A program made the position numbers and the translations under genes. 64,000 bases of DNA from Laetmonice hystrix (taxonomy: Eukaryota). Below the pieces are notes generated by a model, which had not been told where the DNA came from, searched no databases, and saw only the letters and a program-made list of their open reading frames with translations. Below, in pieces: positions 5,372-56,671 of this stretch (position 1 is the first letter of the stretch; the number at the start of each line of letters is the position of its first letter). Location: positions 65,596,001 to 65,660,000 of the forward strand of contig OZ249436.1 in assembly GCA_965235115.1 (NCBI GenBank), given 5' to 3'.

Positions 5372-7600
5372 GTTTTATCTTTGCGCTTGGCTGAATTGAT
5401 CATTTGGTTTAATCCTAGCAGTAACTGATAACGATTTAGCCCCACAGAACAAGCGGACTTCCAATATTCAACATCCGGGAATAGACATCTATTGGGACAT
5501 AGCGGCATTTTATAGCCTTCTTTTCTATCTTAACAAAGTTGATGCCAGACCTGAGAGTACAACAAGTAAAATAGAAGACAAGACTGAGAAATATAGCAAA
5601 CTAGGTACGGTTTACACGCTGAAATACAGATCCTCCACTCCAGAACTGCCTCCATTACATGTTCCAGGACGATTCGATGTTACTGGTTGTATAGGTACTT
5701 TGTCCCTAGGCAGGATGTAGTTAAACAAAGAAAATGACAACGCTAAGGGATAAGAAATGTTAGTACCTTACGTTATTCTAATTCAGGTAATCACTAATTT
5801 TTCTCGAGATATCTAGACATGCAGGCTACAGGTAGATAATATACAGGCCACCATGGTCCGAACTAGTGCGCTCAGAGTCCATATATCCTTGGTATGGTGG
5901 GGTCCTTCATCCCCAGATATACACCCCCAGCCCGCCCAGACCACCCCGACATTGGTAGAATACAAATGGTCCACTAATTGTGAATCCGTATTGATGTAGG
6001 CTCCATCCTCCTGACAGAAGGACGCCACACGTGGTGCGTGTCGCATGCCGGACTCCTACCCAACCACCCCAGGGGACAGACCCCAAAAACTGATCGAGGG
6101 GTCCATATGAATACACCGCCATGATCGGCCATGATCGGGGTATAAACCAGCGCCCCGACCCTTTGTGTCCTGAGACCAGGAAGTACGTGAATGGGGCGGT
6201 AGGGGCACGGCAGACAAGACTGTATATTAATATTTCACGTCAACCGCAACGCCCGCGTCTGATGGATCGGCTGGGTCCATCACGTGACCCGTCATATCTC
6301 TACAGCGTCTGCCGCATGGTGTCGCTGTAGGTGGACGATCTCGGTCGACTGTCACGTACAATACGAGATCATGAGAAACTCTCGTCGGTACACTCCACAG
6401 GCCACAACACCCCCGCTGACTACCGTGTGAGGATCAAGAATTTACGGATTACAGATGAGATAGGTGGGGTGTGTTTTTTATTCAAAAGAAGTTGGTCACA
6501 GATCTGTTTCGGAGTTAGCCAGGCTGGACTGAGAAAGGCAGTCAGGTACAGATCAGTTGCTACAAAAATATAAACACCACATAAATGGTTTATAGGAATT
6601 CCACCATTAAATCCAAGTAATATTTGTTATGACTGGGCAGCAGATTTTCTACAGATCCGGGATTCCACAAATACTACGGACACGACCACAAAACTGCAGC
6701 AGAAGATCTCGTTTAGACCTTTCTTTGGCTCTGTCTCTAAAAAGTATGATTCCTAGCTTGGACACGCCACGCTATTGGTTGGCCGTCAAGCGTTCATTGT
6801 TCTATATATGGCAACATGTATACGACAAAAAAACGATTTACAAACGGAAATATTTATTCTCATGCGGCCAGCCATATATATCCGATCTTTTCCGAAGGCA
6901 TTTTACGAAACAGAAATATTTTACAGTTTGGCCTTAGAGGAACTGTTGTTAATCGGCGAAACTCTATGCTATAGTCATATGGGCGCTGTAATTATTCTAT
7001 CATCGATTGTTTCATAAACTTCGTGAAATACGACCATCCCCCAGATCTAAATCATATTGCTTCTGCGCTCTCCACAACAATTCAACTTGTTCACATCTCC
7101 CCACTAAAATGCTACTGAAGCTTTTTCAATATTCATTTTATTTATTCGTTGGTTTTGTTTACTTTACGTGTAGCTCAGCAATGGTTGTGTTGACATGATC
7201 AATGTGGACGTGCAGATCTACCTTTGGCCCAGACGCTGTCTCTTCACGTGCAGCACGGGCACCGCCACCACGTTGACACGTGCAACAAGAGGAGCGGGTT
7301 CCTGATTGGTGTGAACATTCATGTGTTCGTATAACACCACTGGTATATGAGAAACATGTATGCATGGTCACTTTTTTTCTCTCACAGTATTTTGAAAAAA
7401 ATATTGGTTTATCCCTAAAACTATAAGCCATGTGAGGTGGCTGTTGTATGCGTTATCGTCGGCCACTCATTTTGTGCTCTTAAAAACAGACTCACACAAA
7501 CGCTTTTTCTCTCAACCAAGGTACGCACTTCAGACCAATTCGATCAATATTTCTTTGAGTGCCATACCCCAGAAACAACTCATAATGACTTCGCAAATTC

Positions 7601-7665
7601 GAGGTTGTTACAACCAATTTCCCGAGGTTGTTACAACCAATTTCTCGAGGTTGTTACAACCATTT
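7601..7665. repeat. 23-bp tandem repeat x3 with internal palindrome
   Basis: GAGGTTGTTACAACCAATTTCYC starts at 7601, 7624 and 7647. Each copy contains GGTTGT-T-ACAACC. Confidence 0.9.
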
Positions 7666-9750
7666 GCTCAGTCTTTTCACTTTCTTCTTGTTCTTTTACG
7701 CATGTCTTTGTGAACAACACACTCGAGCACTTTCAATGACCTTTTCCATTAAATTGACTTTTACCGTACCAAGGAAATTAAAGGATTCCAAAGTAGCTTT
7801 CAGAGTTGTTTTTTGTAAATGTAAGTTTAATCTTTAAGCGTCTTCAACAATTTTCAGGAAGTGCTTAACAAAACATTTAATAGCATTGCCAGAGACAAGA
7901 GACAAGAGTTTGCAATATTCCAGAGCTTTCAGATCTTCGACATCATTTTGGTGATGTGAGTTTGATGACAATGTCAGAAACTTATTAATATCGAACTCTC
8001 TGAATCTGTTATGATTGACTGACTGTCTGACTGTCTGTCTGTCTCTCTTCGTCCTCGGTCCCTATCCCGCCCTTCCCAGTCAACAAACAACTGATAAATC
8101 TTGGAGTCTTCCATACTGGAGTTCATGCAGCACGACGGAAGCGGTTAGTATGAAAACCTCACTGGGATACGATACGTTTGGCCCGTAATTAAAGGGAAAA
8201 TGATCTGGTTCTTGCGTAATATTGACACTAATCATTGCTGATGAGCATATTGCGTGACAACTCTACTTAACAATATCGTGCAAAAAGCAACTCGGCTGTC
8301 ATTTGTAAGGGTCGTTTCCATATCAATACCTAAACAAAATTCCTATAGGGCCACAGCTCCAGGAAGAGCTGGCATACTACGTCTATGACCTTTCAAAGCA
8401 CGACGCACTTTCACACTCATGAAAATGAAATATAACTCATTTAGTAGACAAATATAGGCCGATAGTCCCTCCATGGTAATGACTGTTCATCCCTCCTATA
8501 ATGCAACTACGCGCCATTTCTAAATTCTAAAGATCTGCAACGTTGAGGTCTAATGCAAGTAACATCCACCGTTCGAAAAACAGAAGTTACTTCCTCATAT
8601 TGATGATCCATGGGATAACAGGAACCCTCCGGGTACAATATGACACGTTTCCGGTTGTGACTACTGCCTGACCGCAGAAACCGGACAAAGCGGAAGACCA
8701 GTGGCGCAGTGATTGTAGCTACGCGGACTTCTGTCCCAGCTCTCCTGGTCACAGCGCCACCTGTCGACATCACATAGGGTCGGGTCATGTCCGACAGAGC
8801 CCGGTTGATTTTAGACCATTTGCAGCCCGTCGATCTGGCCAACTGTGTAATGTAAAAGGTGCCAATCGCACAGATTGAAGCGTGGCCACGCTACACGCCA
8901 TCGAATGATGACGTGACAAATTGTCATTTCCTCCCAACACTGAGCTGCGTTACCGCCTGCGGACTACATTTAGGCCTAGAACAGGGGCCGGGCGCAGCAG
9001 GGGCATGTTCGGTCATCATGTCTGACACTGGCATTTACTACAGGTCGTCGGAGTTCGCAGGGATTAAACATCCGCAATCTTTATCCGGATGGTCCTCTCT
9101 CTGGCTCTCAACTGCCTTCAATCCAAAATGTCTTGCGAAACCGAGAAGGTCCCAGTATAATTATTTTCATTTCTCCTACTTCCTGGCATATTGGGAGTTC
9201 TGACCCATTTATTCGTTTGTAAAATGCTGAGAGCAAGGTAGCATAAGGTATGTTAAAACATACCTTGTTAGAAGGAAAGTAATAAGTGTGTTTGACCAGT
9301 CTCCTCATACATGTTTAAAGACAAACAAGTTTAGTTCTCCTTTGAAAAGCTTTATTCTGTATCTAGGTTATTTAGCACAGTGTTACTTCCCGTTCAATAC
9401 TGCTATAGTCTGACAGCAGACGGAATCTGCGCCCTCCGTTTGACAAATACTGGTTAACAATAACTGTGAAAACGATTCAATCAAGTAACCGTTTGTCGAC
9501 GGCTTACCGTTTTATTTTATTGGAAGCGGGTCTAATCGGCATCACCTGCTCTTTAGGCACTTTATCCACGCACCAAACTAATCAATCGTAAATTGTTCAC
9601 ACTTTTCCCTGTCTCATTATGATAACAACTATTTCTCACACCAGTAGATCAGTGAAAATGTTGAAGAATATCAAAATAACAGACTCTATCTTCGCGCGAC
9701 GACTCCGTGAGAAGTAGCTAAATATATTGACACAAACGACACTGATATCA

Positions 9751-14589: not shown

Positions 14590-15175
14590 ATCCTAGGATC
14601 AGAACACTCTCGAGTGATTTCCCCCTAGGTTCAGGGCACTAGAGTGATTTTGACCTCGGTTCAAAGCACTCTAGAGTGATTTTGTCCTAGGTTCAGAGCA
14701 CTCTATAGAGTGATTTTGTCCTAGGTTCAGAGCACTAGAGGGATTTTGACCTAGGTTCAGAGCACTAGAGGGATTTTGACCTAGGTTCAGAGCACTCTAG
14801 AGTGATTTTGACCTAGGTTCAAGCACTAGAGGGATTTTGTCCTAGGTTCAGAGCACTCCCGAGTGATTTTGTTCTAGGTTCAGAGCACTCTAGAGTGATT
14901 TTGTCCTAGGTTCAGAGCACTCTATAGAGTGATTTTGTCCTAGGTTCAGAGCACTCCCGAGTGATTTTGTCTTAGGTTCAGAGCACTACAGTGAATTTGT
15001 CTTAGGTTCAGAGCACTCTAGAGTGATTTTGTCCTAGGTTCAGAGCACTACAGTGAATATGTCTTAGGTTCAGAGCACTCTAGAGTGATTTTGTCCTAGG
15101 TTCAGAGCACTTCCGAGTGATTTTGTCCTAGGTTCAGAGCACTAGAGTGATTTTGTCCTAGGTTCAGAGCACTAT
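14590..15175. repeat. Minisatellite, ~30-34-bp unit, ~18 copies
   Basis: The unit is GAGTGATTTTGTCCTAGGTTCAGAGCACT(CT)A, with length variants at the CACT(CT)(AT)AGAG junction. Confidence 0.95.
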
Positions 15176-16347
15176 ACAGTGATACGAGGTAGTGATTTGA
15201 TACTCGTACACCGGGTTATCAAAGGTCGTGATTGTCACTTTGTGCCACTATGCGGTGTTGTACGTCAGAAGAACCCCCGGTACACATACTGATAACAATA
15301 GGACGTTGTGTCTCGCTGTGTGAGGTTATTCCTGATACCATCATCCTATCCTCATTATCAGGTGGACTGACAAAAAAGGAACTTGTTTTTGTCCGGAGGA
15401 TGGCGAACAAAAAAAGTCAAATCTTCTTTAAGAAGCAAGGGTCGAATTCAGAGCTGGTGACATTTCCTTCACTCTTTATTCTATATTAAGGTGTAATCGT
15501 ATATTACTGTTTTAATTTGATCACTTCTTCATGAAGGAGCATAACTCCACACACCACCGACTTTCTATAGATGTCCCTGCTTTGAATGACATAAATTCAT
15601 TATTGTAACATTCTTCTGACCTAAATACTGTGACGCCTTTCGAGCGCATGTCAAATATTGGCACTATTTCTTTTCAAATGATTATTGGAAGTCACGATAA
15701 CATATTTCCAATAATTTGTAAGCCCATAAGAAATAGGGTGTGTGGGGGGGTGTGTTCAAAACTTAAAACGTTAGATATCACCCTTTCCGTTCACAAAAAG
15801 AGGCGTTCCATATAATAGGGGATCTATTACAGGGATTTAGGGATTAAGGATATCCCGCTGCGGTAAGAGAGTATGATTGGGGATTTTACCCCGTAACGTA
15901 AGGGGTTGTGGGGATAGGGAGTAGCCTATATAACCATCCCTGAGGATCATTTACAGACAGGCTGCAAGCATTCAAGCGTATTCTATTACAACAAATATAG
16001 CAGTGGTTCAAACATAACATCAGATCTCCGCAATCTCCTAGAAATCACCGGCTCTTGGCGGCTTGTCGAGCGGCGGGCCGCATAGAGTGCCCTCGTGTGG
16101 AGAATTCCCACACCCAAGATTCAATAAAACCTCAACCCTCGCTGTTTCAGAGATCTTTTCTAAGTATACTGAGATAGCTATTACAGTTAAGTCGTCTTGA
16201 ATGGAGCAACAGAATGCTGTAAAGATCGTAAAGGGACCTCAACCAATCCCAGTATAAAAAAACTACATTAACGCCCTACTCTTTATACACAGACAATGGG
16301 AGGGATCTTCACCCCCTTACGGGCGTTAACTAAAGCGAGCCGCCTAC

Positions 16348-19300: not shown

Positions 19301-22045
19301 CATTAAGCACATGCCCCCTCCCTTCCTCCCTCCGTCCCGCTCGTCGCGTCACCAACGCAACGTCACGCACGGAGGCAGACGGCAGTTTTGTTCCCGTCAA
19401 GTTACTGTTATGCGCAGGTGTGCAACCCGATAATGGCCGTCCTTGACGTTTCTTATCGTATCGAACAGAGCATGCGCGAAGGGCCAACGCGGGAAATGAA
19501 TTCTCAGCCATGAATACAAGCTACATTGACAGCGTGTACGCTCATATTTTCTCCTGTTTACCTTCACGTTACGACAAAATCCACGCCGCCTTTCTTGAAC
19601 GCCTGATCGAGATTGACAGGCATAATTCTAACCCGGGCATGCGCCAGTGGTCATTGGTATGCCGTGTGGTGATGAAACGTTTTCAAAAGGCCACTTTTGT
19701 AATTCACGGAGATAATCAAAACGAGTTGCGATTTCTGTTAAGGCAATTTACCATGCTCCTAGTGGGATCGATTGGGAGTTGCCGTCACATCAGAATCTTC
19801 TAGTTCTAGTTGCAACAAGATGGCCGCATCATATTTATTGGGTTCATTTACGACATATTAATAACATTCAATGGCTTATTTTATAGCGTAAGTGGCTATA
19901 TAACAGGACATAATATTACGCTTGGGAAGGCGTATTGCTTTGGCGCTTGAGCTCCCTGCAATGTGTATGTACGACGGTCTCGCAAAAAATCTGAACAAAA
20001 TGGGCTCTTAACCAAATGCTTCTCTAATGAGGCACGTTTTACAGACTATCTTTAATTAAATATTTCATTAAACAAGTGTTAATCTAGTATCTTGAGTGAA
20101 GGGTTGGAGGATCCCCCAGTGGGTATAATGTGTACAGCCTCTTGTTGTAGGGAAGTACGCATGCGCCAGCCACTGATGGCGCCCTCTACCTGCAGCTCCC
20201 GTCACTCTGTAATGGGATATTATCGATTCAACTCGCGTCCAATTAAACAAGGTGATGTGGGAAAATTCACGTTGTGGGCCTTTTCATGTACGACCAAATC
20301 GCAGCCAACTTTAGGTGCAACTGGATACTAAATTGAACACGCGTCATACTATGACATTTCAGGAGTGCCCCATCAATGCAAAAGCTAGCTCGAGACCGGT
20401 TCCCAATCTTCTATCAGGCAACCCACCCCCTGGCGTGTATAAATGTAGGCCAACTTTATCCCAAGTCTAACCTACCACGTCTAAACTCTCTGCTACCATC
20501 GTCAGGTAGTCGGTCTGTTATCCTATCGCCTTTTAAACGCGTGCTTCTCGCACGCATGTTTGCAGATATTTTCCCACGTCATTCTGGCCTCTCTCGTGTC
20601 CATCCCACTTTATATGTTTTAATTGTGTGATTAATTTTTGTTATGAGTTGCTATAGATGTATTTCTATACTTACTTGATTTCTCTATTTGGGATTTACCT
20701 CTACAAATAGACCATTTGTCGCCTACATTAAAACTTCATAGGTAAGAATGCACATATTATTATCTCAGGGATCTAATCATGCCGGAAGTGCTGGTTATTG
20801 TGGAACAGAGACTTTACACGGATCGATTTTTCCCTTCCAGTCTGAGTGTGAGAATAGCGCGTCAAAATAAAGAACGCCACGCCACCTGGTGACAAACGGT
20901 GATATTTGATTCCACCCAGGCAGATCAGAATTTGGCGCGTTGTTACGGTCTCCAGAGAGCTGGACTTTAGATTCTCGATTCTACTCGCATAGTTGAGGAA
21001 AGATGGTGACTTTAATCGTCATGCGTCTGGTGATGACAATTAAAATCTCCTGACCGGCGAATGGTGGGCGTCCAGCCGCTATAAATACTAACACTGTCAC
21101 TTGCCGCAACTCGTGACAGACCACGGCAGGGTGAGATCTAGAGAATGCACAGCGTGAGAGCTCATGCCGCTCCAGGAACGCTGCCACGGGTAGTGACACC
21201 TGGCGGCTTAATTGATGCGGAACAAGGACCATATTTCAAACGACCTCTTGTGTGAAATATGTGAACTAGGTATTGTGTTCAACAGACTGAGAAGTCCGTG
21301 GGTGCAGGGGATAGGGTTCCGGTGGACTATAAGGAAACCGATTTGTATGTTAAACCCAAAGAGGGGAGTCGGACCCAAGACTTGGCTGGGGAGGAATTGG
21401 GTGGTGTTGTCTATTTACTCATTGCCGTTATAATGGATACAGGACCATGTGCATGCCATAATCCGGCATGTACCAACAGCACATGGCCCAGGGCAAGGGG
21501 AGCGTTAAGGACCCTAAGAATAGTTCTATATAGGGCCTACAAATTCAGTTTGAAGGCGGCGAACTGCATTGGATCGGCGTTGTTACGTACCAGCACTGCG
21601 CAAACAAAAATCGTGCAAGTGTCAGACTCAAGAGTACATAATTATAGCCAGAGTAATCGAGAAATTTATATGGACAGAGCATGTTAAGATCTGTCAAAGA
21701 GTTTGGTCCTTTAATTCCGTTTTATGTCAAAGATATTGTCACTCTAACATGGCCGTACGTTTTGGTACAACTATACCCTTCATCTTCTCGGGCATCAATC
21801 TTGCTAGACATTGACCTAATTGTTTCTAATTACTTTCATTGGCAGGAGGGTCGCGAGGCATGACCCGGCCCATATTGTTGATAACAAACAATGTTCGACA
21901 TCGGACTCCTGCAGGGAAGACATGGCCCTGCCCTACATCCGGGAACCACTTCAGGTCGACCAGTGCGCATGTCAACGAATGGTAAACAGGCCAAGCTTCC
22001 GGCTCCAGTGTGACTGCCCGGATGTCTCATTTGGATACCTTTGAA

Positions 22046-22935
22046 GTGAGTGAAGTCAATCTAGGCTAGGGGGCTCACAGTGAGCGAAGTCAATCTAGGC
22101 CAGGGAGCTCACAGTGAGCGAAGTCAATCTAGGCCAGGGGTCTCACAGTGAGTGAAGTCAATCTAGGCCAGGAAGCTCACAGTGAGCGAAGTCAATCTGG
22201 GCCAGGGGATTCACAGTGAGTGAAGTCAATCTAGGCCAGGGGGGCTCACAGTGGAGTCAATCTAGGCCTGGGGGTTCACAACGAGTGAAGTCAATCTAGG
22301 CCAGGGAACTCACAGTGAGTGAAGTCAATCTAGGCCAGGGGTCTCACAGTGAGTGAAGTCAATCTAGGCCAGGGGATTCACAGTGAGTGAAGTCAATCTA
22401 GGCCAGGGGGCTCACAGTGAGCGAAGTCAATCTAGGCCAGGGAGCTCACAGTGAGCGAAGTCAATCTAGGCCAGGGGTCTCACAGTGAGTGAAGTCAATC
22501 TAGGCCAGGGAGCTCACAGTGAGTGAAGTCAATCTAGGCCAGGGGATTCACAGTGAGTGAAGTCAATCTAAGCCAGGCGGCTCACAGTGAGTGAAGTCAA
22601 TCTAGGCTAGGGGGCTCACAGTGAGTGAAGTCAATCTAGGCCAGGGGGCTCACAGTGAGTGAAGTCAATCTAGGCCAGGGGGTTCACAGCGAGTGAAGTC
22701 AATCTAGGCCAGGGGTCTCACAGTGAGTGAAGTCAATCTAGGCCAGGGGGTTCACAGCGAGTGAAGTCAATCTAGGCCAGGGGGTTCACAGCGAGTGAAG
22801 TCAATCTAGGCCAGGGGGCTCACAGTGAGTAAGGTCAATCTAGGCCAGGGGGCTCACAGTGAGCGAAGTAAATCTAGGCCAGGGGGCGCACAGTGAAGGC
22901 CATCTAGGATGATCTAGGCCCGGGGGTTCACAGTG
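22046..22935. repeat. Minisatellite, 34-bp unit, ~26 copies
   Basis: The unit is GTGAGTGAAGTCAATCTAGGCCAGGGGGCTCACA with scattered substitutions. Confidence 0.97.
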
Positions 22936-25685: not shown

Positions 25686-26039
25686 TATAACCTATATATA
25701 CTATGCCTAATCTATTTTGTACTATGTATATCCGAAACGTGTGTGTACGGGTTGGGGTGTGCGCGTCTCTTATAGGCCTCTAAATTGAATACCCTTAGTG
25801 ACACAATAAGGTTTGTCAGTTACACAGTTCGTTAGTTTTCTTCTGGTACTCCGGTTTGGTCACCATGACTTACCTCTCCGCAGACCCCCCCCCCCCCCCG
25901 ACACATACGCTATAAGATGTAGGCCTATACTTCCATCTCCAGTATCGCTAGATGGCGCCTGCAGAGCGCTACTACCGACGTCCCGAAATTCTAAAAATCA
26001 TATTTACATGCAGGCCTGTCTTCTCTGGACGACATCGTC

Positions 26040-26723
26040 TGGCCACAAAATACGGCACTCATTACAGAGGTGGGACACGTCACAGCCACACACCGACACT
26101 GACGTTACTCTCTGGCCACAAAATACGGCACTCGTTACAGAGGTGGGACACGTCACAGCCACACACCGACACTGACGTTACTCTCTGACCACAAAATACG
26201 GCACTCATTACAGAGGTTGGACACGTCACGGCCACACACCGACACTGACGTTACTCTCTGACCACAAAATACGGCACTCATTACAGAGGTTGGACACGTC
26301 ACAGCCACACACCGACACTGACGTTACTCTCTGGCCACAAAATACGGCACTCATTACAGAGGTGGGACACGTCACAGCCACACACCGACACTGACGTTAC
26401 TATCTGACCACAAAAAACGGCACTCATTACAGAGGTTGGACACGTCACAGCCACACACCGACACTGACGTTACTCTCTGGCCACAAAATATACGGCACTC
26501 ATTACAGAGGTTGGACACGTCACAGCCACACACCGACACTGACGTTACTCTCTGGCCACAAAATACGGCACTCATTACAGAGGTTGGACACGTCACGGCC
26601 ACACGCCGACACTGACGTTACTCTCTGACCACAAAAAACGGCACTCATTACAGAGGTTGGACACGTCACAGCCACACACCGACACTGACGTTACTCTCTG
26701 ACCACAAAAAAACGGCACTCATT
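26040..26723. repeat. 73-bp minisatellite, left arm (~9.4 copies)
   Basis: The unit is GGCCACAAAATACGGCACTCATTACAGAGGTGGGACACGTCACAGCCACACACCGACACTGACGTTACTCTCT. The arm breaks off after ...GGCACTCATT. Confidence 0.97.
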
Positions 26724-29700
26724 CCTGCTCGACCACCAAAGCTCCTTTATTAGGGGAGTGGCGGTGGCCTAGTGGGCATGGATGTCGACACCTTATGCTA
26801 TGCGAATGGGTGCAGTAATCTTAGGGCCTGGGTTCGATTCCTGTAGAGGACTATACAACTTTTCTCTTTAGGGACATTGTCAAAGTAATTGGGTTACCCC
26901 TGATGCCCGTGCATTTCAAAAGAAAAATACAGTCTACGCCAGTGCCAGGATTACCTTAACAGTCAATGTTCGGTAGAAATCATGTGTAGCTCTAACTAGG
27001 AAAATATGGATTCCGTCTCATTTAAAAAAGATGTGTGTAGGGGGGAGGGTCCATTGTCCTGCTCGACCACCAAAGCTCCTTTATTAGGGGAGTGGCGGTG
27101 GCCTAGTGGGCATGGATGTCGACACCTTATGCTATGCGAATGGGTGCAGTAATCTTAGGGCCTGGGTTCGATTCCTGTAGAGGACTATACAACTTTTCTC
27201 TTTAGGGACATTGTCAAAGTAATTGGGTTACCCCTGATGCCCGTGCATTTCAAAAGAAAAATACAGTCTACGCCAGTGCCAGGATTACCTTAACAGTCAA
27301 TGTTCGGTAGAAATCATGTGTAGCTCTAACTAGGAAAATATGGATTCCGTCTCATTTAAAAAAGATGTGTGTAGGGGGGAGGGTCCATTGTCCTGCTCGA
27401 CCACCAAAGCTCCTTTATTAGGGGAGTGGCGGTGGCCTAGTGGGCATGGATGTCGACACCTTATGCTATGCGAATGGGTGCAGTAATCTTAGGGCCTGGG
27501 TTCGATTCCTGTAGAGGACTATACAACTTTTCTCTTTAGGGACATTGTCAAAGTAATTGGGTTACCCCTGATGCCCGTGCATTTCAAAAGAAAAATACAG
27601 TCTACGCCAGTGCCAGGATTACCTTAACAGTCAATGTTCGGTAGAAATCATGTGTAGCTCTAACTAGGAAAATATGGATTCCGTCTCATTTAAAAAAGAT
27701 GTGTGTAGGGGGGAGGGTCCATTGTCCTGCTCGACCACCAAAGCTCCTTTATTAGGGGAGTGGCGGTGGCCTAGTGGGCATGGATGTCGACACCTTATGC
27801 TATGCGAATGGGTGCAGTAATCTTAGGGCCTGGGTTCGATTCCTGTAGAGGACTATACAACTTTTCTCTTTAGGGACATTGTCAAAGTAATTGGGTTACC
27901 CCTGATGCCCGTGCATTTCAAAAGAAAAATACAGTCTACGCCAGTGCCAGGATTACCTTAACAGTCAATGTTCGGTAGAAATCATGTGTAGCTCTAACTA
28001 GGAAAATATGGATTCCGTCTCATTTAAAAAAGATGTGTGTAGGGGGGAGGGTCCATTGTCCTGCTCGACCACCAAAGCTCCTTTATTAGGGGAGTGGCGG
28101 TGGCCTAGTGGGCATGGATGTCGACACCTTATGCTATGCGAATGGGTGCAGTAATCTTAGGGCCTGGGTTCGATTCCTGTAGAGGACTATACAACTTTTC
28201 TCTTTAGGGACATTGTCAAAGTAATTGGGTTACCCCTGATGCCCGTGCATTTCAAAAGAAAAATACAGTCTACGCCAGTGCCAGGATTACCTTAACAGTC
28301 AATGTTCGGTAGAAATCATGTGTAGCTCTAACTAGGAAAATATGGATTCCGTCTCATTTAAAAAAGATGTGTGTAGGGGGGAGGGTCCATTGTCCTGCTC
28401 GACCACCAAAGCTCCTTTATTAGGGGAGTGGCGGTGGCCTAGTGGGCATGGATGTCGACACCTTATGCTATGCGAATGGGTGCAGTAATCTTAGGGCCTG
28501 GGTTCGATTCCTGTAGAGGACTATACAACTTTTCTCTTTAGGGACATTGTCAAAGTAATTGGGTTACCCCTGATGCCCGTGCATTTCAAAAGAAAAATAC
28601 AGTCTACGCCAGTGCCAGGATTACCTTAACAGTCAATGTTCGGTAGAAATCATGTGTAGCTCTAACTAGGAAAATATGGATTCCGTCTCATTTAAAAAAG
28701 ATGTGTGTAGGGGGGAGGGTCCATTGTCCTGCTCGACCACCAAAGCTCCTTTATTAGGGGAGTGGCGGTGGCCTAGTGGGCATGGATGTCGACACCTTAT
28801 GCTATGCGAATGGGTGCAGTAATCTTAGGGCCTGGGTTCGATTCCTGTAGAGGACTATACAACTTTTCTCTTTAGGGACATTGTCAAAGTAATTGGGTTA
28901 CCCCTGATGCCCGTGCATTTCAAAAGAAAAATACAGTCTACGCCAGTGCCAGGATTACCTTAACAGTCAATGTTCGGTAGAAATCATGTGTAGCTCTAAC
29001 TAGGAAAATATGGATTCCGTCTCATTTAAAAAAGATGTGTGTAGGGGGGAGGGTCCATTGTCCTGCTCGACCACCAAAGCTCCTTTATTAGGGGAGTGGC
29101 GGTGGCCTAGTGGGCATGGATGTCGACACCTTATGCTATGCGAATGGGTGCAGTAATCTTAGGGCCTGGGTTCGATTCCTGTAGAGGACTATACAACTTT
29201 TCTCTTTAGGGACATTGTCAAAGTAATTGGGTTACCCCTGATGCCCGTGCATTTCAAAAGAAAAATACAGTCTACGCCAGTGCCAGGATTACCTTAACAG
29301 TCAATGTTCGGTAGAAATCATGTGTAGCTCTAACTAGGAAAATATGGATTCCGTCTCATTTAAAAAAGATGTGTGTAGGGGGGAGGGTCCATTGTCCTGC
29401 TCGACCACCAAAGCTCCTTTATTAGGGGAGTGGCGGTGGCCTAGTGGGCATGGATGTCGACACCTTATGCTATGCGAATGGGTGCAGTAATCTTAGGGCC
29501 TGGGTTCGATTCCTGTAGAGGACTATACAACTTTTCTCTTTAGGGACATTGTCAAAGTAATTGGGTTACCCCTGATGCCCGTGCATTTCAAAAGAAAAAT
29601 ACAGTCTACGCCAGTGCCAGGATTACCTTAACAGTCAATGTTCGGTAGAAATCATGTGTAGCTCTAACTAGGAAAATATGGATTCCGTCTCATTTAAAAA

Positions 29701-30271
29701 AGATGTGTGTAGGGGGGAGGGTCCATTGTCCTGCTCGACCACCAAAGCTCCTTTATTAGGGGAGTGGCGGTGGCCTAGTGGGCATGGATGTCGACACCTT
29801 ATGCTATGCGAATGGGTGCAGTAATCTTAGGGCCTGGGTTCGATTCCTGTAGAGGACTATACAACTTTTCTCTTTAGGGACATTGTCAAAGTAATTGGGT
29901 TACCCCTGATGCCCGTGCATTTCAAAAGAAAAATACAGTCTACGCCAGTGCCAGGATTACCTTAACAGTCAATGTTCGGTAGAAATCATGTGTAGCTCTA
30001 ACTAGGAAAATATGGATTCCGTCTCATTTAAAAAAGATGTGTGTAGGGGGGAGGGTCCATTGTCCTGCTCGACCACCAAAGCTCCTTTATTAGGGGAGTG
30101 GCGGTGGCCTAGTGGGCATGGATGTCGACACCTTATGCTATGCGAATGGGTGCAGTAATCTTAGGGCCTGGGTTCGATTCCTGTAGAGGACTATACAACT
30201 TTTCTCTTTAGGGACATTGTCAAAGTAATTGGGTTACCCCTGATGCCCGTGCATTTCAAAAGAAAAATACA
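26724..30271 (+). mobile_element. Tandem array of ~10.6 identical 334-bp units carrying a Pol III (tRNA-type) internal promoter; putative tandem retroelement or rolling-circle product
   Basis: Unit starts fall at 26724, 27058, 27392, 27726, 28060, 28394, 28728, 29062, 29396, 29730 and 30064 (constant 334 bp). No differences were seen between the copies compared. Each unit has an A-box, a B-box and T4. The tandem structure is certain; the mobile-element class is inferred. Confidence 0.7.
26758..26863 (+). ncRNA. Predicted ~105-nt Pol III transcript unit (tRNA-like, not a canonical tRNA), repeated 11 times at 334-bp intervals
   Basis: A-box TGGCCTAGTGG (26765-26775), B-box GGTTCGATTCC (26831-26841) and TTTT (26860-26863) are present. 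The acceptor stem does not pair (GTGGCGG vs AGAGGAC). Confidence 0.45.
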
Positions 30272-31028
30272 GAGGTGGGACACGTCACGGCCACACACAG
30301 ACACTGACGTTACTCTCTGACCACAAAATACGGCACTCATTACAGAGGTGGGACACGTCACGGCCACACACCGACACTGACGTTACTATCTGACCACAAA
30401 ATACGGCACTCATTACAGAGGTTGGACACGTCACGGCCACACACCGACACTGACGTTACTATCTGACCACAAAATACGGCACTCATTACAGAGGTGGGAC
30501 ACGTCACGGCCACACACCGACACTGACGTTACTCTCTGGCCACAAAATACGGCACTCATTACAGAGGTTGGACACGTCACAGCCACACACCGACACTGAC
30601 GTTACTCTCTGACCACAAAATACGGCACTCATTACAGAGGTTGGACACGTCACGGCCACACACCGACACTGACGTTACTCTCTGACCACAAAATACGGCA
30701 CTCATTACAGAGGTTGGACACGTCACGGCCACACACCGACACTGACGTTACTCTCTGACCACAAAATACGGCACTCATTACAGAGGTTGGACACGTCACG
30801 GCCACACACCGACACTGACGTTACTCTCTGGCCACAAAATACGGCACTCATTACAGAGGTGGGACACGTCACAGCCACACACCGACACTGACGTTACTCT
30901 CTGGCCACAAAATACGGCACTCATTACAGAGGTGGGACACGTCACAGCCACACACCGACACTGACGTTACTCTCTGGCCACAAAATACGGCACTCGTTAC
31001 AGAGGTGGGACACGTCACGGCCACACAC
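30268..31028. repeat. 73-bp minisatellite, right arm (~10.4 copies)
   Basis: The array resumes at (T)ACAGAGGTGGGACACG..., exactly the bases that follow GGCACTCATT in the unit. Confidence 0.97.
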
Positions 31029-34576: not shown

Positions 34577-35119
34577 ATGACCCGAACTTTCGATGTAGAT
34601 TCTTGAGGGCAGTTCTTGATTTTGAGAGAAAATTTATGACATTAAAAAGGAACTTTGTAGAATTGAGTGGCCTTATAGACATGATCAAATTAGGATTGTA
34701 GAAATTGAAATATTTTCCAATATGGGCCTACATCAAGAAGTATGGACTGTTGTGTTGATCTGCCCTTCATCTCGTCAAACGAAACTATTTAAAAAGATCT
34801 TACTGGTTTTATAGTAGTATGACCATGATATGTTTTGAATAACTGATGTGACGCTGCTCTAGCCCCAGGAATTCGCACGTCCAGGTGAGCTCCAGCGGTT
34901 GACACCTCGTGACCTTAAACTACATATTCTAATATTACATTTCTGATTCTACTTCTAATAATAGCTGAACAAAATCAGTATTCCATTTGGTTTTATATGG
35001 AGTTATCCAACTGATATCGCCAGCTGATATCAACTGATACCATTCCCTTCCAAAAATAGGCAAAATAGGCTGTATACCAGTGCGGGCGTCATAATAGGTC
35101 GCGGTCCCCTTACATCTGA

Positions 35120-35837
35120 GTACTGAGACAGATGGCCCTGTGGATGCCACCAGCCAGCCGACCGACCACCGGGCGGGGCTGGGCGGCCTGTCGGGGCCTA
35201 AAGTACTGAGACAGATGGCCCTGTGGATGCCACCAGCCAGCCGACCGACCACCGGGCGGGGCTGGGCGGCCTGTCAGGGCCTAAATTACCGAGACAGATG
35301 GCCCTGTGGATGCCACCAGCCAGCCGACCGACCACCGGGCGGGGCTGGGCGGCCTGTCAGGGCCTAAAGTACCGAGACAGATGGCCCTGTGGAGGCCACC
35401 AGCCAGCCGACCGACCACCGGGCGGGGCTGGGCGGCCTGTCGGGGCCTAAAGTACTGAGACAGATGGCCCTGTGGATGCCACCAGCCAGCTATGGCCCTG
35501 TGGATGCCACCAGCCAGCCGACCGACCACCGGGCGGGGCTGGGCGGCCTGTCAGGGCCTAAAGTACTGAGACAGATGGCCCTGTGGAGGCCACCAGCCAG
35601 CCGACCGACCACCGGGCGGGGCTGGGCGGCCTGTCGGGGCCTAAAGTACCGAGACAGATGGCCCTGTGGATGCCACCAGCCAGCCCACCGACCACCGGGC
35701 GGGGCTGGGCGGTCGGTCAGGGCCTAAAGTACTGAGACAGATGGCCCTGTGGATGCCGCCAGCCAGCCGACCGACCACAGGGCGGGGCTGGGCGGCCTGT
35801 CAGGGCCTAAAGTACTGAGACAGATGGCCCTGTGGAT
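35120..35837. repeat. GC-rich minisatellite, 83-bp unit, ~8.5 copies
   Basis: The unit is GTACTGAGACAGATGGCCCTGTGGATGCCACCAGCCAGCCGACCGACCACCGGGCGGGGCTGGGCGGCCTGTCRGGGCCTAAA, with one internal partial duplication near 35491. Confidence 0.97.
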
Positions 35838-38800
35838 GTTAATTGATGGAGACGCAGACTTCCGAGCGGGGTGCTGTATACACACTCATGGGACAATCAG
35901 ATATGCCCGGCCACTTGTCGACGACAGAATATATTATTGGACCGATGAACGGACGTTCATGTTGCGTTCCTTTCCCCACCGGCCAAGTTTTTCTAGTGAC
36001 TCTTGTTTGGGTCGGGTTTCCATTTCCGGTGTCGACTCATAATTAAGGCACACGAGTATTTATCTTCTAAAGGTCAAACCAATCATTTATAAAAAGTCAA
36101 ACTATTACCTATCTTTCTCTACAGTTGGTTTGGTCTGATTTTGCTTAGGGTCACATGCTACAGTTGGATCCTCGTTTCTGACCAGTCTTTCACACGTCGC
36201 AAACCCAAGGCGGTCTCCTGCATATTATTGTGGTCACATTATATTGGAAAGGATTGGTTCACTCAGAGAACATATCCGCCCTGCCACGTTCGCTGATTGG
36301 CATGTCGAAAGGGTCTTGAAGTAGAGACCCATTTGAACACAGCCCGCAAACGACGATGGGCGTAAGTTGTGTAAAACTACACTAGATCACTATTATGGTT
36401 GACTCACGAGGAAGCGAGACGGTTCGAGGAACCGTTCGACATTACCATGTGTACGTCACGTCTCCACGCGCGCATTTAGTCTGAGCATGACGGATCACGT
36501 GACAACGTCGCCAAGCCCAACTCTCGCTCGACAGTCTCGGAATATCGCGTTTCTGTTTGTACATCAAATTGCAATATTTCCTTTCGATGTATCTGCTGGC
36601 CTTGACTCTCGCGGCACGGTGTGCATTACATGAATTGAATGGAGCATAGAGAACATTTTCCGACGTTTGTTCGATAGAGAGCGGCGCAGTGTCCACCTCC
36701 AGGTGCTCAGGTGGCATGAATATTCATCTGTACAGTATAAGTAAATACCTTAACCATTTAAAAAGGCAATGAATGTGGTATGTGCAGTCTAGCGACGCTT
36801 TGATACGTGCGACTGAGGTCGTCTGGAATTACTCTGACAACCACAGAGTACCTATATACAGAGGTTTCACTTACGTCAAAATGCGTTCTAGGCCATCGCA
36901 GCGCCACCTATCGGGGTGGATGACGCTGCTGGCTCTACGTTGGGGACTAAAAGCTTAGTTTTTCTCACCTTGGGTGCTTAAAACGCCCTCGCGGTGGGAA
37001 TAATGAATCAATTCACTTTGAAATTGTTGCAAAGAAAACTAGAGATAATTGCCTTTTGTCTAGTCTGAAATTTATACAAATAGATCAAAGAATTATTTTT
37101 CTTATGGCCATTTGAAAATCATCAAAAAAGTATTAAAAACCCCGTAAAACTTGTGACCTAGAAAAACGTTCTACCTAGCAGCGCTTGCCACGCAAAATCG
37201 GTCGCGACGACCTATACAAAAAAGTATCCAGAATTATTCCCCACATCGTAAGGTCTTCACAGATGCCCTTCTTTTAGCGAGACTCCTTATAGTTTTGGAT
37301 ACAGCAAGGTTTGTTTGGAAATTTAAAAGTTCCCAAAACTTTGTTAATTGACGTTAGAATCTAAGCTCTGCACAGTGTAGCCGGATCAGGGACAGGGGCC
37401 TACACTGTACATAGGCTACAGTGATGTTTACAGATGTATTATAATGCTGTAATTTTCTGAGAATATCTACTGACCTTTGTAATCTCTGCTTCTGTAGTAT
37501 TTTAATTTATCTTATCATAAAACGAGAGCTAGACAGAAAAATAGTGCAGTCTACGTTAGATCTAGCCTTCTTCTGTCTGTTGTTCCGCACGTCTTCTCTA
37601 TGACGTAACAGACACTGATTTAACGAGGCACGCACTGTCTTTTTGATAGTGTAACATTGTAATATCAAGTATCAAAATACGTAGTTAACTATACTATGAT
37701 GTCACAAGTGACAATAAAAGCACAAACAGATCCAATCCAGGCTATAAAATTGTAGCCAGTGTGGATTACGAGGACGTGTTGACGTCCAGCCCAAGTAAAG
37801 GCCAAGACACCCGGCCAGTAGGCTACGGTTTTTGAGCAGCAGCGCTCTAAAACGACCCACAAAGATCTCTCAAACTGCCACAACTGGCAGTTGTGACTAG
37901 ATCTACTGATGATTTTGTCATCAGATCAGTATGAACTACATTATACATAGCATAGGCCTACATAGATAGCCCTACACCAAGCACCCTTGCCTTGCCTACT
38001 ACACCTCTCGTTCTGTCATGCTTACCATCTTCAGCGGTTATTCGACGTCACGTTGCCTGATTTTAGGCCTCAAGGCAATGGTTTTTTTTAATTCAGCCGT
38101 TCTTTTAAGGATTATATTTGTGGTAGGCCTATATAAATTATCTTGACAAATTTGGTATTGACACAAAGCTAATGTTATGGGGATTCAGACTGTATATCTT
38201 AACTTTTTTAGCCTTCAGAGTCTAGGGGTTTCAGTACATTGTTGGCAAATGTACCAAGGCGAACAGTTTGTGTAAAAGATTTCTTCAAATGTTCTTATTC
38301 ACACTCTCGTAACAGCAAAATAATGTGTTTACAAGAAAAGTCACCTATATACTATGAAAGTAAATTGTATGAGGAAGAGAATGATACCATACTTGTTTAG
38401 ATTGCTTTGGGATAGACTGAGTGTGCACCGTATTAAAAGTCGTGCGTTTTGCCTGGGCGGCCGTTGGGGCCGGCCGTTTCTGGGCTACCGTCATCCACGC
38501 CGCTAGGTGGCTGACCCGATGTAACGTCACAATAGAGCTCAATGACACTGAAACTTCTGTATCTACCTATTCTGTGTGACAACTCCAAAAGTTATGTAGG
38601 CCTAGGAATATGGTACGTTGTACCAGCTATACGTGAATTGTCATAAGATAGTAATGCACAGAGACTTAGACTTAGACTGAGCAGGCGCGATTTAAGTAGA
38701 TCATTGTCACTTTAATAACCGTGCTTTGTCTTCTACTATTAATGGTTTCACATTTATTTTTGCATTGACTTGCTTTTTTGTATTTCGAATTCTAATTATA

Positions 38801-47323: not shown

Positions 47324-48314
47324 CACCAAGGATATTATCACCTGTAGAAGAGGTGAAGGGTTGGGTGGCACGTACTAACCGACAGGGAACACCAAGGATA
47401 TTATCACCTGTAGAAGAGGTGAAGGGTTGGGTGGCACGTACTAACCAACACTGAACACCAAGGATATCATCACCTGTAGAAGAGGTGAAGGGTTGGGTGG
47501 CACGTACTAACCAACACTGAACACCAAGGATATTATCACCTGTAGAAGAGGTGAAGGGTTGGGTGGCACGTACTAACCGACACTGAACACCAAGGATATC
47601 ATCACCTGTAGAAGAGGTGAAGGGTTGGGTGGCACGTACTAACCAACACTGAACACCAAGGATATTATCACCTGTAGAAGAGGTGAAGGGTTGGGTGGCA
47701 CGTACTAACCAACACTGAACACCAAGGATATTATCACCTGTAGAAGAGGTGAAGGGTTGGGTGGCACGTACTAACCAACACTGAACACCAAGGATATTAT
47801 CACCTGTAGAAGAGGTGAAGGGTTGGGTGGCACGTACTAACCAACACTGAACACCAAGGATATTATCACCTGTAGAAGAGGTGAAGGATTGAGTGGCACG
47901 TACTAACCCACACTGAACACCAAGGATATTATCACCTGTAGAAGAGGTGAAGGGTTGGGTGGCACGTACTAACCAACACTGAACACCAAGGATATTATCA
48001 CCTGTAGAAGAGGTGAAGGATTGAGTGGCACGTACTAACCCACACTGAACACCAAGGATATTATCACCTGTAGAAGAGGTGAAGGGTTGGGTGGCACGTA
48101 CTAACCAACACTGAACACCAAGGATATTATCACCTGTAGAAGAGGTGAAGGATTGAGTGGCACGTACTAACCCACACTGAACACCAAGGATATTATCACC
48201 TGTAGAAGAGGTGAAGGGTTGGGTGGCACGTACTAACCGACACTGAACACCAAGGATATTATCACCTGTAGAAGAGGTGAAGGGTTGGGTGGCACGTACT
48301 AACCGACACTGAAC
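47324..48314. repeat. Minisatellite, 66-bp unit, 15 copies
   Basis: The unit is CACCAAGGATATTATCACCTGTAGAAGAGGTGAAGGGTTGGGTGGCACGTACTAACCAACACTGAA. It produces the 22-aa-repeat minus-strand ORF 47148-48428. Confidence 0.97.

Positions 48315-56642: not shown

Positions 56643-56671
<29 letters not shown>
53515..56671 (+). mobile_element. Young CR1-group (L2/Crack/Daphne-like) LINE with intact ORF2, 3' UTR and poly(A)
   Basis: An uninterrupted frame runs 53515-56388, followed by a ~255-bp 3' UTR, AATAAA at 56641 and A28 (56644-56671). The 5' end is uncertain and may lie at 52933 if AATTATC is the TSD. Confidence 0.93.
53527..56388 (+). CDS. LINE ORF2: apurinic-like endonuclease plus reverse transcriptase
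   Basis: APE motifs: WNVQS, LCLQETW, IYRPP, GDINLD, LLDHI, SDHLPV. RT motifs: WKMATVTPLPK, RPISILP, QNGFRKKHST, IDFAKAFDTVDH, GVPQGSILGP, FADD, YLGVTID. Confidence 0.95.
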   Translation: MEYHASIGSHYKGVKFTFWNVQSVMNKIDSIRLSLDDLDTDILCLQETWLRREINDSLIALPNYAIYRNDRKALNGTKKGGGVCTYVRKKWSITPIHDDSINISSDDIEVLVLKLNLKFTKQIFIVNIYRPPSGSILNFFTHPEAIIDSLTSTADCELYLGGDINLDYLKLGRHRRKLTHFENRYNLRQLISEPTRLGKIDSLLDHIYINKYNLAHQHGIITVNLSDHLPVYLIRKKTKNKYEKIEFRGRSYRNYSAEIFSDKLSQLNWAWVHEQVNINTTVSYLNNEINTILNEIAPMKTFKFSKTKPLWMSNELIEYMKDRDRAMTRAKKTKNLEDKKTAALLRNYCNRLVRNAKAMFLREKLEQNKSNPRKFWSQIKEVFNPVNESNNLTLRDDADEIISPDLLPDAINNFFKDIGPNLANKLEKGSSTPLTNIIPLLTPPISLKHTTRPELLKLIREIKVYKASGDPQISSRVWKDLLMDRADDYLEILNRSIDTATFPDCWKMATVTPLPKVPNPQHFSELRPISILPLPGKILERIVHNQLYNCIESNNLITTVQNGFRKKHSTTDTIFKFLNNVYNDMNENRSAAVIYIDFAKAFDTVDHTILLRKLRHNFRFTESTVNWIASYLSNRKQRVLLNGKYSDWQNILCGVPQGSILGPLMFTCYTNDMSSVLQYSQMYQFADDTALYRSDVNQARNIHLLQLDLNNLVNWCNNNKLTININKTKITHFGKAKQLTPHSEISINNRQLQLERTYKYLGVTIDAELKFTDHINDMIKKLTYKNYIFKRTRYYMNDYTALIVLKTMLLPLVDHGNMFTTSCNAEDLQRLVVQYNNAIRIALGVRSPRDISTTDLYIAAKVQTLETKRSYNSLCCVYRLLNLSDLSLSITNAGTRAQQGPLTRLATPKSTWYLKSPIFTALRAWNNLPVTIRVQDDYSTFKKLLKTELYKQF

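What the first reader, a model, noticed from the sequence alone, without database searches (positions are those of the whole stretch)
26715..30280. 3.5-kb block of identical 334-bp units inserted in perfect register into a diverged 73-bp minisatellite, with no TSD
Seen: the left arm stops at ...GGCACTCATT| and the right arm resumes at |ACAGAGGTGGG, so removing the block restores an intact 73-bp unit with nothing duplicated or lost. The right junction shares TACAG with the unit's own continuation (AAAAATACAGTCT). The left junction resembles the internal junction (CATT-CCTG vs CATTGTCCTG). The 334-bp copies look identical, while the host 73-bp copies carry many substitutions and A-run variants. 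Inference: all ~10.6 copies arrived in one recent event from a single template. Candidate mechanisms are rolling-circle copying of a 334-nt circle (eccDNA, or circular RNA reverse-transcribed as in retrozymes) or microhomology-primed insertion of a multimeric cDNA. Unequal crossing-over in place would not explain a foreign unit appearing mid-array.
Basis: partly seen in the sequence, partly recalled or inferred. Interest (0 to 1): 0.72.

Follow-up and report, generated by a model that had tools for sequence, protein, structure and literature searches.

The report
Penelope-driven concatemer of a SINE-like element
The 3.5-kb block is one very recent head-to-tail multi-copy insertion of a small non-coding mobile element copied by this animal's active Penelope-like retrotransposon. 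It landed where a minisatellite mimics the element's own tail, and it is one clear case of a process that has happened at dozens of other sites in this genome.

Summary
Window 26724-30272 is 10.63 identical 334-bp units, set in register inside a 73-bp minisatellite whose copies are about 96% alike.

The unit is not foreign. It is a dispersed family with at least 230 unit matches at 40 or more loci, 99.4-100% identical, mostly as arrays of 2-14.6 units.

- **End signature:** 63 of 68 independent copies end at the same unit position (ACAG(TC), 207-217). Their 5' ends fall anywhere in the unit. This is the signature of target-primed reverse transcription.
- **Promoter:** the unit carries perfect Pol III A and B boxes.
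- **Ribozyme:** no hammerhead or other known ribozyme was found.
- **Partner:** unit 144-193 matches the 3' UTR of a young Penelope-like element (PLE) with RT and GIY-YIG domains. That element has at least 48 intact 759-aa ORFs and itself sits in head-to-tail arrays. Both elements end in AAAAnACAG followed by a 34-bp tail repeat.
- **Target:** the site TTACAG/AGGTGGG mimics the element-tail junction.

Whether the template was an RNA circle or a multi-unit RNA remains open. This is a ribozyme-less, Pol III-promoter variant of PLE-dependent non-autonomous elements and non-LTR retrozymes. Earlier notes of this scan had found the same SINE family elsewhere in this genome, but not its PLE partner.

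The parts
26038..26723 (+). Left arm of the host 73-bp minisatellite (9.4 copies), ending ...CACTCATT at the 5' junction
   Evidence: TRF; sequence; unit identities; unique to this locus
26724..30272 (+). Concatemer of 10.63 identical 334-bp units of a SINE-like, PLE-dependent non-autonomous retroelement. It starts at unit position 1 and ends at unit position 209
   Evidence: no variant in any copy; same family at 40 or more loci
26765..26775 (+). Pol III A box TGGCCTAGTGG (unit 42-52), repeated in every unit
   Evidence: perfect match to the TRGCNNAGTGG consensus (established knowledge)
26831..26841 (+). Pol III B box GGTTCGATTCC (unit 108-118), repeated in every unit
   Evidence: perfect match to GGTTCGANNCC. 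No cloverleaf tRNA was found (ARAGORN)
26746..26751 (+). TTTATT (unit 23-28). In the majority subfamily this is TTTTTT, a Pol III terminator-like T6 run just upstream of the presumed start. The A at unit 26, together with A at 301, is this array's haplotype
26867..26916 (+). 3' module (unit 144-193) shared with the 3' UTR of the autonomous Penelope-like element. It is the presumed RT recognition region. The last copy lies at 30207-30256
   Evidence: alignment (score 48 against 20.9 +/- 3.8 in 500 shuffles, maximum 35)
30269..30272 (+). ACAG: the 3' junction microhomology, shared by the element end (ACAGTC) and the target (ACAGAGGTGGG)
30273..31028 (+). Right arm of the host 73-bp minisatellite. 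It begins AGGTGGGA, which mimics the first bases of the element's 34-bp tail repeat (AGGTGGGG...)

Best explanation
The block is a single, very recent retrotransposition event. It inserted a non-autonomous, SINE-like element, whose 334-bp unit has an internal Pol III A/B-box promoter, as a head-to-tail concatemer. [quoted passage not shown]

Steps:
1. An RNA carrying the unit is made. This is inferred. The promoter boxes are shown, but no RNA data were available.
2. The PLE protein recognises the 3' module that the element shares with the PLE 3' UTR. The similarity is shown; the recognition is inferred.
3. The endonuclease opens a target containing ACAG followed by AGGTGG-like sequence. The freed DNA 3' end pairs with ACAG(UC) of the RNA and primes cDNA synthesis. 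The constant 3' end and the microhomology are shown at 63 of 68 copies. The 73-mer site matches the element-tail junction at 12 of the 14 bases either side of the two omitted bases (TC).
4. Reverse transcription runs backwards through more than ten unit lengths of one continuous template. That template is either a circular unit-length RNA or a multi-unit transcript, and this is unresolved.
5. Synthesis stops at an arbitrary phase, here unit position 1. The 5' end is joined without target duplication, as at other sites of this family.

Landing 'in register' follows from near-blunt opening at a motif that every 73-bp unit carries.
For: - **Dispersed young family.** At least 230 unit matches at 40 or more loci on many chromosomes, 99.4-100% identical.
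- **Asymmetric ends.** In 68 independent copies, 63 end at unit 207-217, 52 of them at 209-211. The 5' starts span the whole unit, and lengths run from 0.16 to 14.6 units.
- **Arrays born whole.** Arrays are internally homogeneous and carry array-private variants in all units (L044 194insA, L047 291A/302G, L049 236G, L050 201T; the window has 26A/301A). Five arrays of 8-14 units are identical to one another over 49 full units.
- **Partner element.** L022:164-1155 is a 5'-truncated ORF with a GIY-YIG domain (Pfam E 1.2e-8). The genome holds at least 48 intact 759-aa ORFs colinear over residues 4-762 with P0002, a 762-aa protein carrying RVT_1 and GIY-YIG. These copies lie in head-to-tail arrays of about 5,581-bp period.
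- **Shared 3' end.** The PLE 3' UTR aligns with unit 144-193, and both end AAAAnACAG followed by the AGGTGG... 34-mer tail.
- **Same insertion behaviour elsewhere.** Other arrays sit in register in unrelated minisatellites with ACAG/ACA at the 3' junction, or in unique DNA without TSD.
- **Agreement with published PLE traits.** 5' truncation, partial tandems, a 30-40-bp tail, bias towards repeats, non-autonomous derivatives with 3' similarity and multicopy head-to-tail insertions (PMC8557442), and microhomology joins without TSD (PMC3846280).
Against: - No RNA runs were available, so transcription, RNA ends and circularity are untested.
- No raw read spanning the junctions and no empty allele could be examined.
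- RVT_1 in the relative P0002 scores just below Pfam's cut-off (26.9 against 29.6 bits). PLE identity therefore rests on colinearity with P0002 plus the GIY-YIG hit.
- The loci sampled were the best BLAST hits, not a random census.
- The shared 3' module shows no significant predicted fold.
- Only one PLE 3' end was read directly (L022). The others are known only as match coordinates.
Confidence: 0.8

Rival explanations
1. A short insertion of one or two units arrived by retrotransposition. The array then grew to 10.6 copies in place by unequal crossing-over or replication slippage.
For: Tandem arrays can expand locally. Some loci show later duplications: L022 has a 2,090-bp higher-order repeat and L028 a duplicated 5.63-unit array. 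A recent preprint favours local amplification for retrozyme arrays (10.64898/2026.07.22.740005, Discussion).
Against: All 10.63 units, including both edge units, are identical. Five other arrays of 8-14 units at different loci are identical to one another over 49 full units. That leaves no time for independent stepwise growth at each locus. Two-unit arrays already carry private variants in both units. The autonomous PLE shows the same head-to-tail habit.
Confidence: 0.1
2. A DNA-level event: re-integration of rolling-circle-amplified eccDNA, or recombination-based capture of a satellite block at a double-strand break in the minisatellite.
For: There is no TSD and 4 bp of microhomology at one junction. 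A 364-bp (334+30) circular-type unitig occurs in another sample, which fits a DNA circle as well as a tandem array.
Against: A circle opened at random would give variable breakpoints at both ends. Instead, 63 of 68 copies share one end and only the other varies. The fixed end coincides with the end of a module shared with a retrotransposon's 3' UTR and tail.
Confidence: 0.05
3. An assembly or polishing artefact: a concatemer wrongly placed in the minisatellite, or diverged copies flattened to identity.
For: Only short contigs were served.
Against: The same architecture recurs at dozens of loci with different flanks, different 5' phases and locus-specific variants. A 3.5-kb array is shorter than typical long reads (general knowledge).
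Confidence: 0.03

Closest known systems
Non-LTR retrozymes of animals (Cervera & de la Pena 2020, PMC7229834; Li et al. 2026 preprint 10.64898/2026.07.22.740005)
   Same: Non-coding units of about 300 bp, found as dispersed short tandem arrays from dimers to large multimers. GC is moderate (45.8% here). They are linked to Penelope-like elements and proposed to move through RNA, possibly circular.
   Different: Retrozymes are defined by a type I hammerhead ribozyme in each unit. None is found here (Rfam; no CUGANGA box on either strand). This unit instead has tRNA-type Pol III A and B boxes. Its link to the PLE is a shared 3' UTR module and tail, not a pLTR or ribozyme.
Non-autonomous Penelope-like elements such as MRC1 and non-autonomous Chlamys of Chlamydomonas (Craig et al. 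2021, PMC8557442)
   Same: Sequence similarity to the autonomous PLE at the 3' end, frequent 5' truncation, pseudo-LTR and multicopy head-to-tail insertions, a 30-40-bp tail, and an insertion bias for repeats that hides TSDs.
   Different: Those belong to the clade with an N-terminal endonuclease, in algae. Here the partner is a canonical animal PLE with a C-terminal GIY-YIG domain. The element carries a Pol III promoter, and the targets are minisatellites with an ACAG motif rather than (CA)n or (C)n.
tRNA-derived SINEs with a stringent LINE partner (for example UnaSINE1/UnaL2 or MIR/L2; own knowledge and PMC5753468)
   Same: Internal A and B boxes, high copy number, a 3' region shared with the autonomous element, 5'-truncated copies, and target-primed reverse transcription.
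   Different: The partner is a PLE, not an APE- or RLE-type LINE. Copies are often multi-unit concatemers that include a 152-bp linker outside the 30-211 SINE body. No cloverleaf tRNA is recognisable.
Schistosoma Sm-alpha and newt satellite 2 (recalled from memory; Ferbeyre 1998 and Epstein & Gall 1987 as cited in PMC4209133)
   Same: Units of about 330-335 bp that occur both in tandem and dispersed. Sm-alpha also has Pol III-type promoter boxes (from memory).
   Different: Both encode active hammerhead ribozymes. This unit has only an imperfect look-alike (CUGAUG...GAAA...GUC) that lacks core base A9 and helix II.

Membership tests
Non-LTR retrozyme | Short (150-450 bp) non-coding units in dispersed tandem arrays | tested here: met
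   334-bp unit; arrays of 2-14.6 units at 40 or more loci
Non-LTR retrozyme | Type I hammerhead ribozyme in every unit | tested here: not met
   No Rfam hit at E<=1 over 6 kb or E<=10 over 777 nt. No CUGANGA core on either strand of the unit
Non-LTR retrozyme | Expression as unit-length circular RNA | not testable with these tools
   No RNA run is on record for this organism
PLE-dependent non-autonomous element | 3' end similar to that of an autonomous PLE present in the same genome | tested here: met
   Unit 144-193 against L022:1168-1218, score 48 against 20.9 +/- 3.8 in shuffles. Both share the terminal AAAAnACAG and the 34-mer tail
PLE-dependent non-autonomous element | Autonomous partner with RT and GIY-YIG in one ORF, intact copies present | tested here: met
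   GIY-YIG Pfam E 1.2e-8. At least 48 ORFs of 759 aa are colinear with P0002, which has RVT_1 268-429 and GIY-YIG 598-686. RVT_1 is slightly under the curated cut-off
PLE-dependent non-autonomous element | PLE-type insertion anatomy: 5' truncation, head-to-tail partial tandems, 30-40-bp tail, occasional inverted junctions | tested here: met
   34-mer tail (n=24 exact-length copies). Inverted junction at L022:8767/8774. PLE itself in arrays of 5,581-bp period
tRNA-derived SINE | Internal Pol III A and B boxes | tested here: met
   Perfect consensus matches at unit 42-52 and 108-118
tRNA-derived SINE | Recognisable tRNA-like head (cloverleaf) | tested here: not met
   ARAGORN finds no tRNA in the window. 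Rfam gives only an 11-nt T-loop match
tRNA-derived SINE | Transcribed by Pol III | not testable with these tools
   No RNA data
   The 5' end falls at any phase of the unit and only the 3' end is fixed. No regular TSD. PBS and PPT were not searched for
Helitron or other rolling-circle DNA transposon | Fixed 5' TC and 3' CTRR termini, inserted between A and T | tested here: not met
   Variable 5' end; 3' end ACAG(TC); flanks are not A/T-specific

The most novel reading that the evidence does not exclude
The concatemers may be made without any ribozyme. The telomerase-related PLE reverse transcriptase would go round a unit-length RNA circle many times, a ribozyme-free route to retrozyme-like arrays. 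That RNA would come from a self-contained Pol III unit, with its start near unit 30 and a T6 terminator at unit 23-28 of the next copy.

The element's 34-bp tail, and other minisatellites that begin with ACAG/AGGTG, would then act as self-reinforcing landing pads. Part of this genome's abundant 30-75-bp minisatellites could be by-products or targets of PLE activity.

Three results fit this reading:
- Arrays with a T6 run in every unit are not shorter than arrays without it (median 4.7 against 2.5 units).
- All units are identical, with no length variation at any possible end-to-end joint.
- Private variants are present in all units of an array.
Probability: 0.3. Interest if true: 0.7.

Novelty: new variant of a known kind. 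Interest (0 to 1): 0.5.

Why it matters
How Penelope-like elements build their tandem structures, and how retrozyme-like arrays spread, are stated open questions (PMC8557442; 10.64898/2026.07.22.740005).

This family is unusually easy to read. There are dozens of zero-divergence arrays with one fixed end and one free end, an identifiable intact partner element, and a defined priming motif. It shows that whole concatemers, not single units, are the inserted product, and that a hammerhead ribozyme is not needed for this.

It also appears to be a tRNA-promoter SINE serviced by a PLE rather than a LINE. I did not find such a pairing described in the papers searched. That is absence in a limited library, not proof of novelty.

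In practice, such arrays explain 'foreign' blocks inside minisatellites and should be annotated as single insertions.

Tried and rejected
- **Ribozyme searches.** Rfam on the region, on a dimer and on the PLE 3' end found no ribozyme. A motif scan for the hammerhead core found only an imperfect CUGAUG...GAAA...GUC at the 3' end.
- **tRNA search.** ARAGORN found none.
- **RNA folding.** Folding of the shared 3' module gave no significant structure: z 0.6 for the element and -2.0 for the PLE UTR.
- **RT search by family.** A genome search with Pfam RVT_1, meant to place the RT next to GIY-YIG, was swamped by 4,701 other RT candidates. This was solved instead through a full-length relative.
- **Reads.** Only Logan unitigs were served, with no RNA runs. 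Junctions are not bridged and no empty allele is visible.
- **Rejected ideas.**
  - A sequence-specific motif at the 5' junction: it is seen only in tail arrays and not elsewhere.
  - Homology of the 73-mer to the 34-mer tail beyond the junction: weak, local score 31.
  - End-to-end template jumps on Pol III-terminated RNAs as the main route: the T-run would be expected to vary in length between units, and it does not.
Full report
**Observation.** Tandem Repeats Finder reports a 334-bp period at 26723-30272 with 10.6 copies, 100% matches and score 7100. It is flanked by 73-bp arrays at 26038-26723 (9.4 copies, 95% matches) and 30268-31028 (10.4 copies, 97%). BLAST phasing gives ten complete units and a final 209-nt partial unit at 26724-30272, with no variant in any copy. 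The 19 complete host units are 73-75 bp long and 96.2% identical on average. The 73-mer occurs nowhere else in the assembly. The left arm ends CACTCATT and the right arm resumes ACAGAGGTGGG, so removing the block restores a normal unit. The four bases ACAG (30269-30272) belong equally to the unit, which continues ACAGTC, and to the host. The description is therefore correct. The only reservation is that a target duplication of exactly one or more 73-bp periods could not be seen.

**The unit is a mobile family.** A search of the window's own 627-Mb assembly finds at least 230 unit-length matches at 40 or more loci on most chromosomes, 99.4-100% identical. Most lie in runs of 2-14 consecutive units. 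The linker part alone has 1,014 first-look candidates. These counts are lower bounds, because only the best candidates are scored. I fetched 34 loci and mapped every copy.

**End signature.** Among 68 independent copies or arrays, 63 end at unit position 207-217 and 52 at 209-211, that is at ...AAAAATACAG(TC). The 5' ends fall anywhere in the unit, with an excess in the first 67 nt. Lengths range from 0.16 to 14.6 units. One fixed end and one free end is the classical signature of target-primed reverse transcription that starts at a defined 3' site and stops at variable distance. It is the opposite of what a randomly opened DNA circle would give.

**What the unit contains.** It has perfect matches to the Pol III A-box (unit 42-52) and B-box (unit 108-118) consensus, but no recognisable tRNA. 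There is a T4 run inside the CTTTTC at unit 136-141. At unit 23-28 the majority subfamily has TTTTTT, while the window's array has TTTATT. No Rfam family matches, including all hammerhead, HDV-like, twister and other ribozyme models. Neither strand contains the hammerhead CUGANGA core. The 3' end does read CUGAUG...GAAA...GUC, but it lacks core base A9 and any helix II. I treat this as a curiosity.

**The partner.** In locus L022 a 5'-truncated ORF lies next to copies of the element. Its last 227 residues contain a GIY-YIG nuclease domain (Pfam E 1.2e-8). The preceding 117 residues are 56% identical to the region upstream of GIY-YIG in a metagenomic relative, P0001. Feature-based neighbours of P0001 combine HTH_animal, GIY-YIG and RVT_1 in animal proteins. 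A profile-free search found a 762-aa relative, P0002, with RVT_1 (268-429; 26.9 bits, just under the 29.6 cut-off) and GIY-YIG (598-686). P0002 aligns end to end (residues 4-762, 44-45% identity, E about 1e-205) with at least 48 uninterrupted 759-aa ORFs in this genome. Copies are 97-99% identical to each other at the protein level. Many sit in head-to-tail arrays with a period of about 5,581 bp, for example seven in a row on C7 at 18.34 Mb. RT plus a C-terminal GIY-YIG domain in a single ORF defines canonical Penelope-like elements (PMC8557442, PMC4209133).

**Shared 3' end.** The 3' UTR of this PLE (L022:1168-1218) aligns with unit 144-193. The local score is 48, against 20.9 +/- 3.8 and a maximum of 35 in 500 shuffles. 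Both elements then end with AAAA(C/T)ACAG, followed by the same AGGTGG... repeat of about 34 bp. In tandem PLE copies the match stops right after that terminus. In terminal copies it runs on into the tail. This is the usual evidence for a non-autonomous element borrowing a partner's machinery.

**Why here, and why in register.**
- Thirty-seven of the 68 copies are followed by the 34-mer tail, and ten by a second repeat type beginning ACAGTGAGG.
- Copies in tail arrays have a 5' flank ending ...CCTAATCAC(T) and a 3' flank starting AGGTGGGG. They replace exactly the (T)ACAGTC between two tail units.
- Arrays elsewhere lie in unrelated minisatellites of 35-52 bp, again in register and again with ACAG or ACA at the 3' junction (L031, L037, L039, L041).
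- One array in unique DNA is bracketed by a 55-bp direct repeat (L043).
- Seven arrays in unique DNA show no duplication (L021, L023, L032, L033, L038, L042, L051).
- The window's target, TTACAG/AGGTGGGA, matches the element-tail junction CTACAGTC/AGGTGGGG at 12 of the 14 bases either side of the missing TC.

The simplest reading is as follows. The nicked target pairs with ACAG of the RNA, helped by the tail-like AGGTGGG. The second strand is opened almost opposite. Every 73-bp unit offers the same site. Published PLE insertions likewise show repeat bias, TSDs that are short, absent or indiscernible, microhomology joins and a 30-40-bp tail (PMC8557442, PMC3846280).

**One event.** All 10.63 units are identical, while the surrounding host repeats differ by about 4%. 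Arrays elsewhere carry private variants in every unit, even when they have only two units (L044 194insA, L047 291A/302G, L049 236G, L050 201T). Five arrays of 8-14 units at different loci are identical to one another over 49 full units. Independent stepwise growth at each locus in so little time is much less likely than insertion of ready-made concatemers. The window's haplotype (26A, 301A) was not seen over a whole unit elsewhere among scored hits. The linker alone matches at 100% at C13:27.49 Mb, C2:23.19 Mb, C5:21.0 Mb and C6:0.985 Mb. I could not fetch these, so I do not claim the haplotype is private.

**Template topology remains open.**
- Perfect identity of units, including the T-run, argues against end-to-end jumps between separately terminated RNAs.
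- Arrays whose units all carry T6 are not shorter than those without it (median 4.7 against 2.5 units, Mann-Whitney p=0.008). The loci were ascertained as best BLAST hits, so this comparison is biased.
- That result argues against long Pol III read-through transcripts as templates.
- What remains is a circular unit-length RNA or a long transcript made by another polymerase.
- No ribozyme that could cut out a unit was found, and no RNA data exist here.

**Reads.** The runs that hold this DNA are served only as short Logan contigs. They confirm the unique flanks and the very high depth of the unit, and they show the alternative continuation into the 34-mer tail after unit 211. They do not bridge the junctions. 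A run labelled as another organism holds a 364-bp contig, equal to 334+30, with two differences. That is what a tandem or circular 334-bp unit gives in a k=31 graph.

**Comparison with what is known.** The block behaves like the multicopy head-to-tail insertions of non-autonomous PLE derivatives (PMC8557442) and looks like an animal non-LTR retrozyme (PMC7229834). It fails the retrozyme's defining test, the hammerhead, and adds a tRNA-type Pol III promoter. I file it as a new variant of PLE-dependent non-autonomous elements. Earlier notes of this scan had already described the same SINE family piling into its 34-base tails elsewhere in this genome (s1-330533). None linked it to a PLE.

**Limits.** I therefore could not read a full PLE copy, its 5' end, or candidate source arrays.

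Noticed in passing
window 53515-56385 (+), A-run at 56644-56671: An uninterrupted 957-aa ORF with an apurinic-type endonuclease domain and RVT_1 (E 9e-36), followed about 260 bp later by a 28-nt A run. This is an apparently intact poly(A)-type LINE, unrelated to the element studied.
   Followed up: partly
window 14591-15183, 22045-22896, 35119-35838, 47324-48314: Four more minisatellites, with periods of 32, 34, 83 and 66 bp and 9-25 copies each, lie in the same 64 kb. This genome is unusually rich in 30-85-bp tandem repeats. Whether any are PLE tails or landing pads was not tested.
   Followed up: no
window unit 177-211, e.g. 26900-26934: The fixed 3' end reads CUGAUG...GAAA...GUC, ending exactly after GUC, the classical hammerhead cleavage triplet. 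Core base A9 and helix II are missing. It could be a decayed ribozyme remnant or coincidence.
   Followed up: partly
L022:1350-8767 (G000 C18:8.004-8.012 Mb): A 2,090-bp higher-order repeat, present three times, made of a 5.5-unit array plus a 0.56-unit fragment. It is followed at L022:8767/8774 by a convergent inverted junction between a plus-strand and a minus-strand array.
   Followed up: partly
L028:2306-4185 and 6741-8620 (G000 C7:31.19 Mb): The same 5.63-unit array with identical flanks occurs twice, 4,435 bp apart. This is a segmental duplication that happened after insertion.
   Followed up: no
L026, L028, L029, L035, L044, L046, L052 flanks: A second repeat family begins ACAGTGAGG. 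It has a 57-mer form and a 16-mer form, and there is a variant linker that joins ACAGT to unit position about 324. This suggests a sister subfamily or a second partner with a different tail.
   Followed up: partly
run X4 (organism B), contig on window 29893-30256: A sample with a different organism label holds the unit as a 364-bp circular-type unitig with only two differences. Marine metagenomes hold 14-17% of the sampled words. The family, or the animal, is present beyond the sequenced specimen.
   Followed up: no
G000 C6:36844-75799: An array of at least 11 PLE copies with a shortened 294-aa ORF at irregular spacings of 2.5-5.1 kb. This is a deletion derivative amplified as a block (coordinates only).
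   Followed up: no
L040:2-1222: An ORF with Integrase_H2C2 and DUF5641 domains, a fragment of an LTR-type retroelement, lies next to a 10.7-unit array.
   Followed up: no
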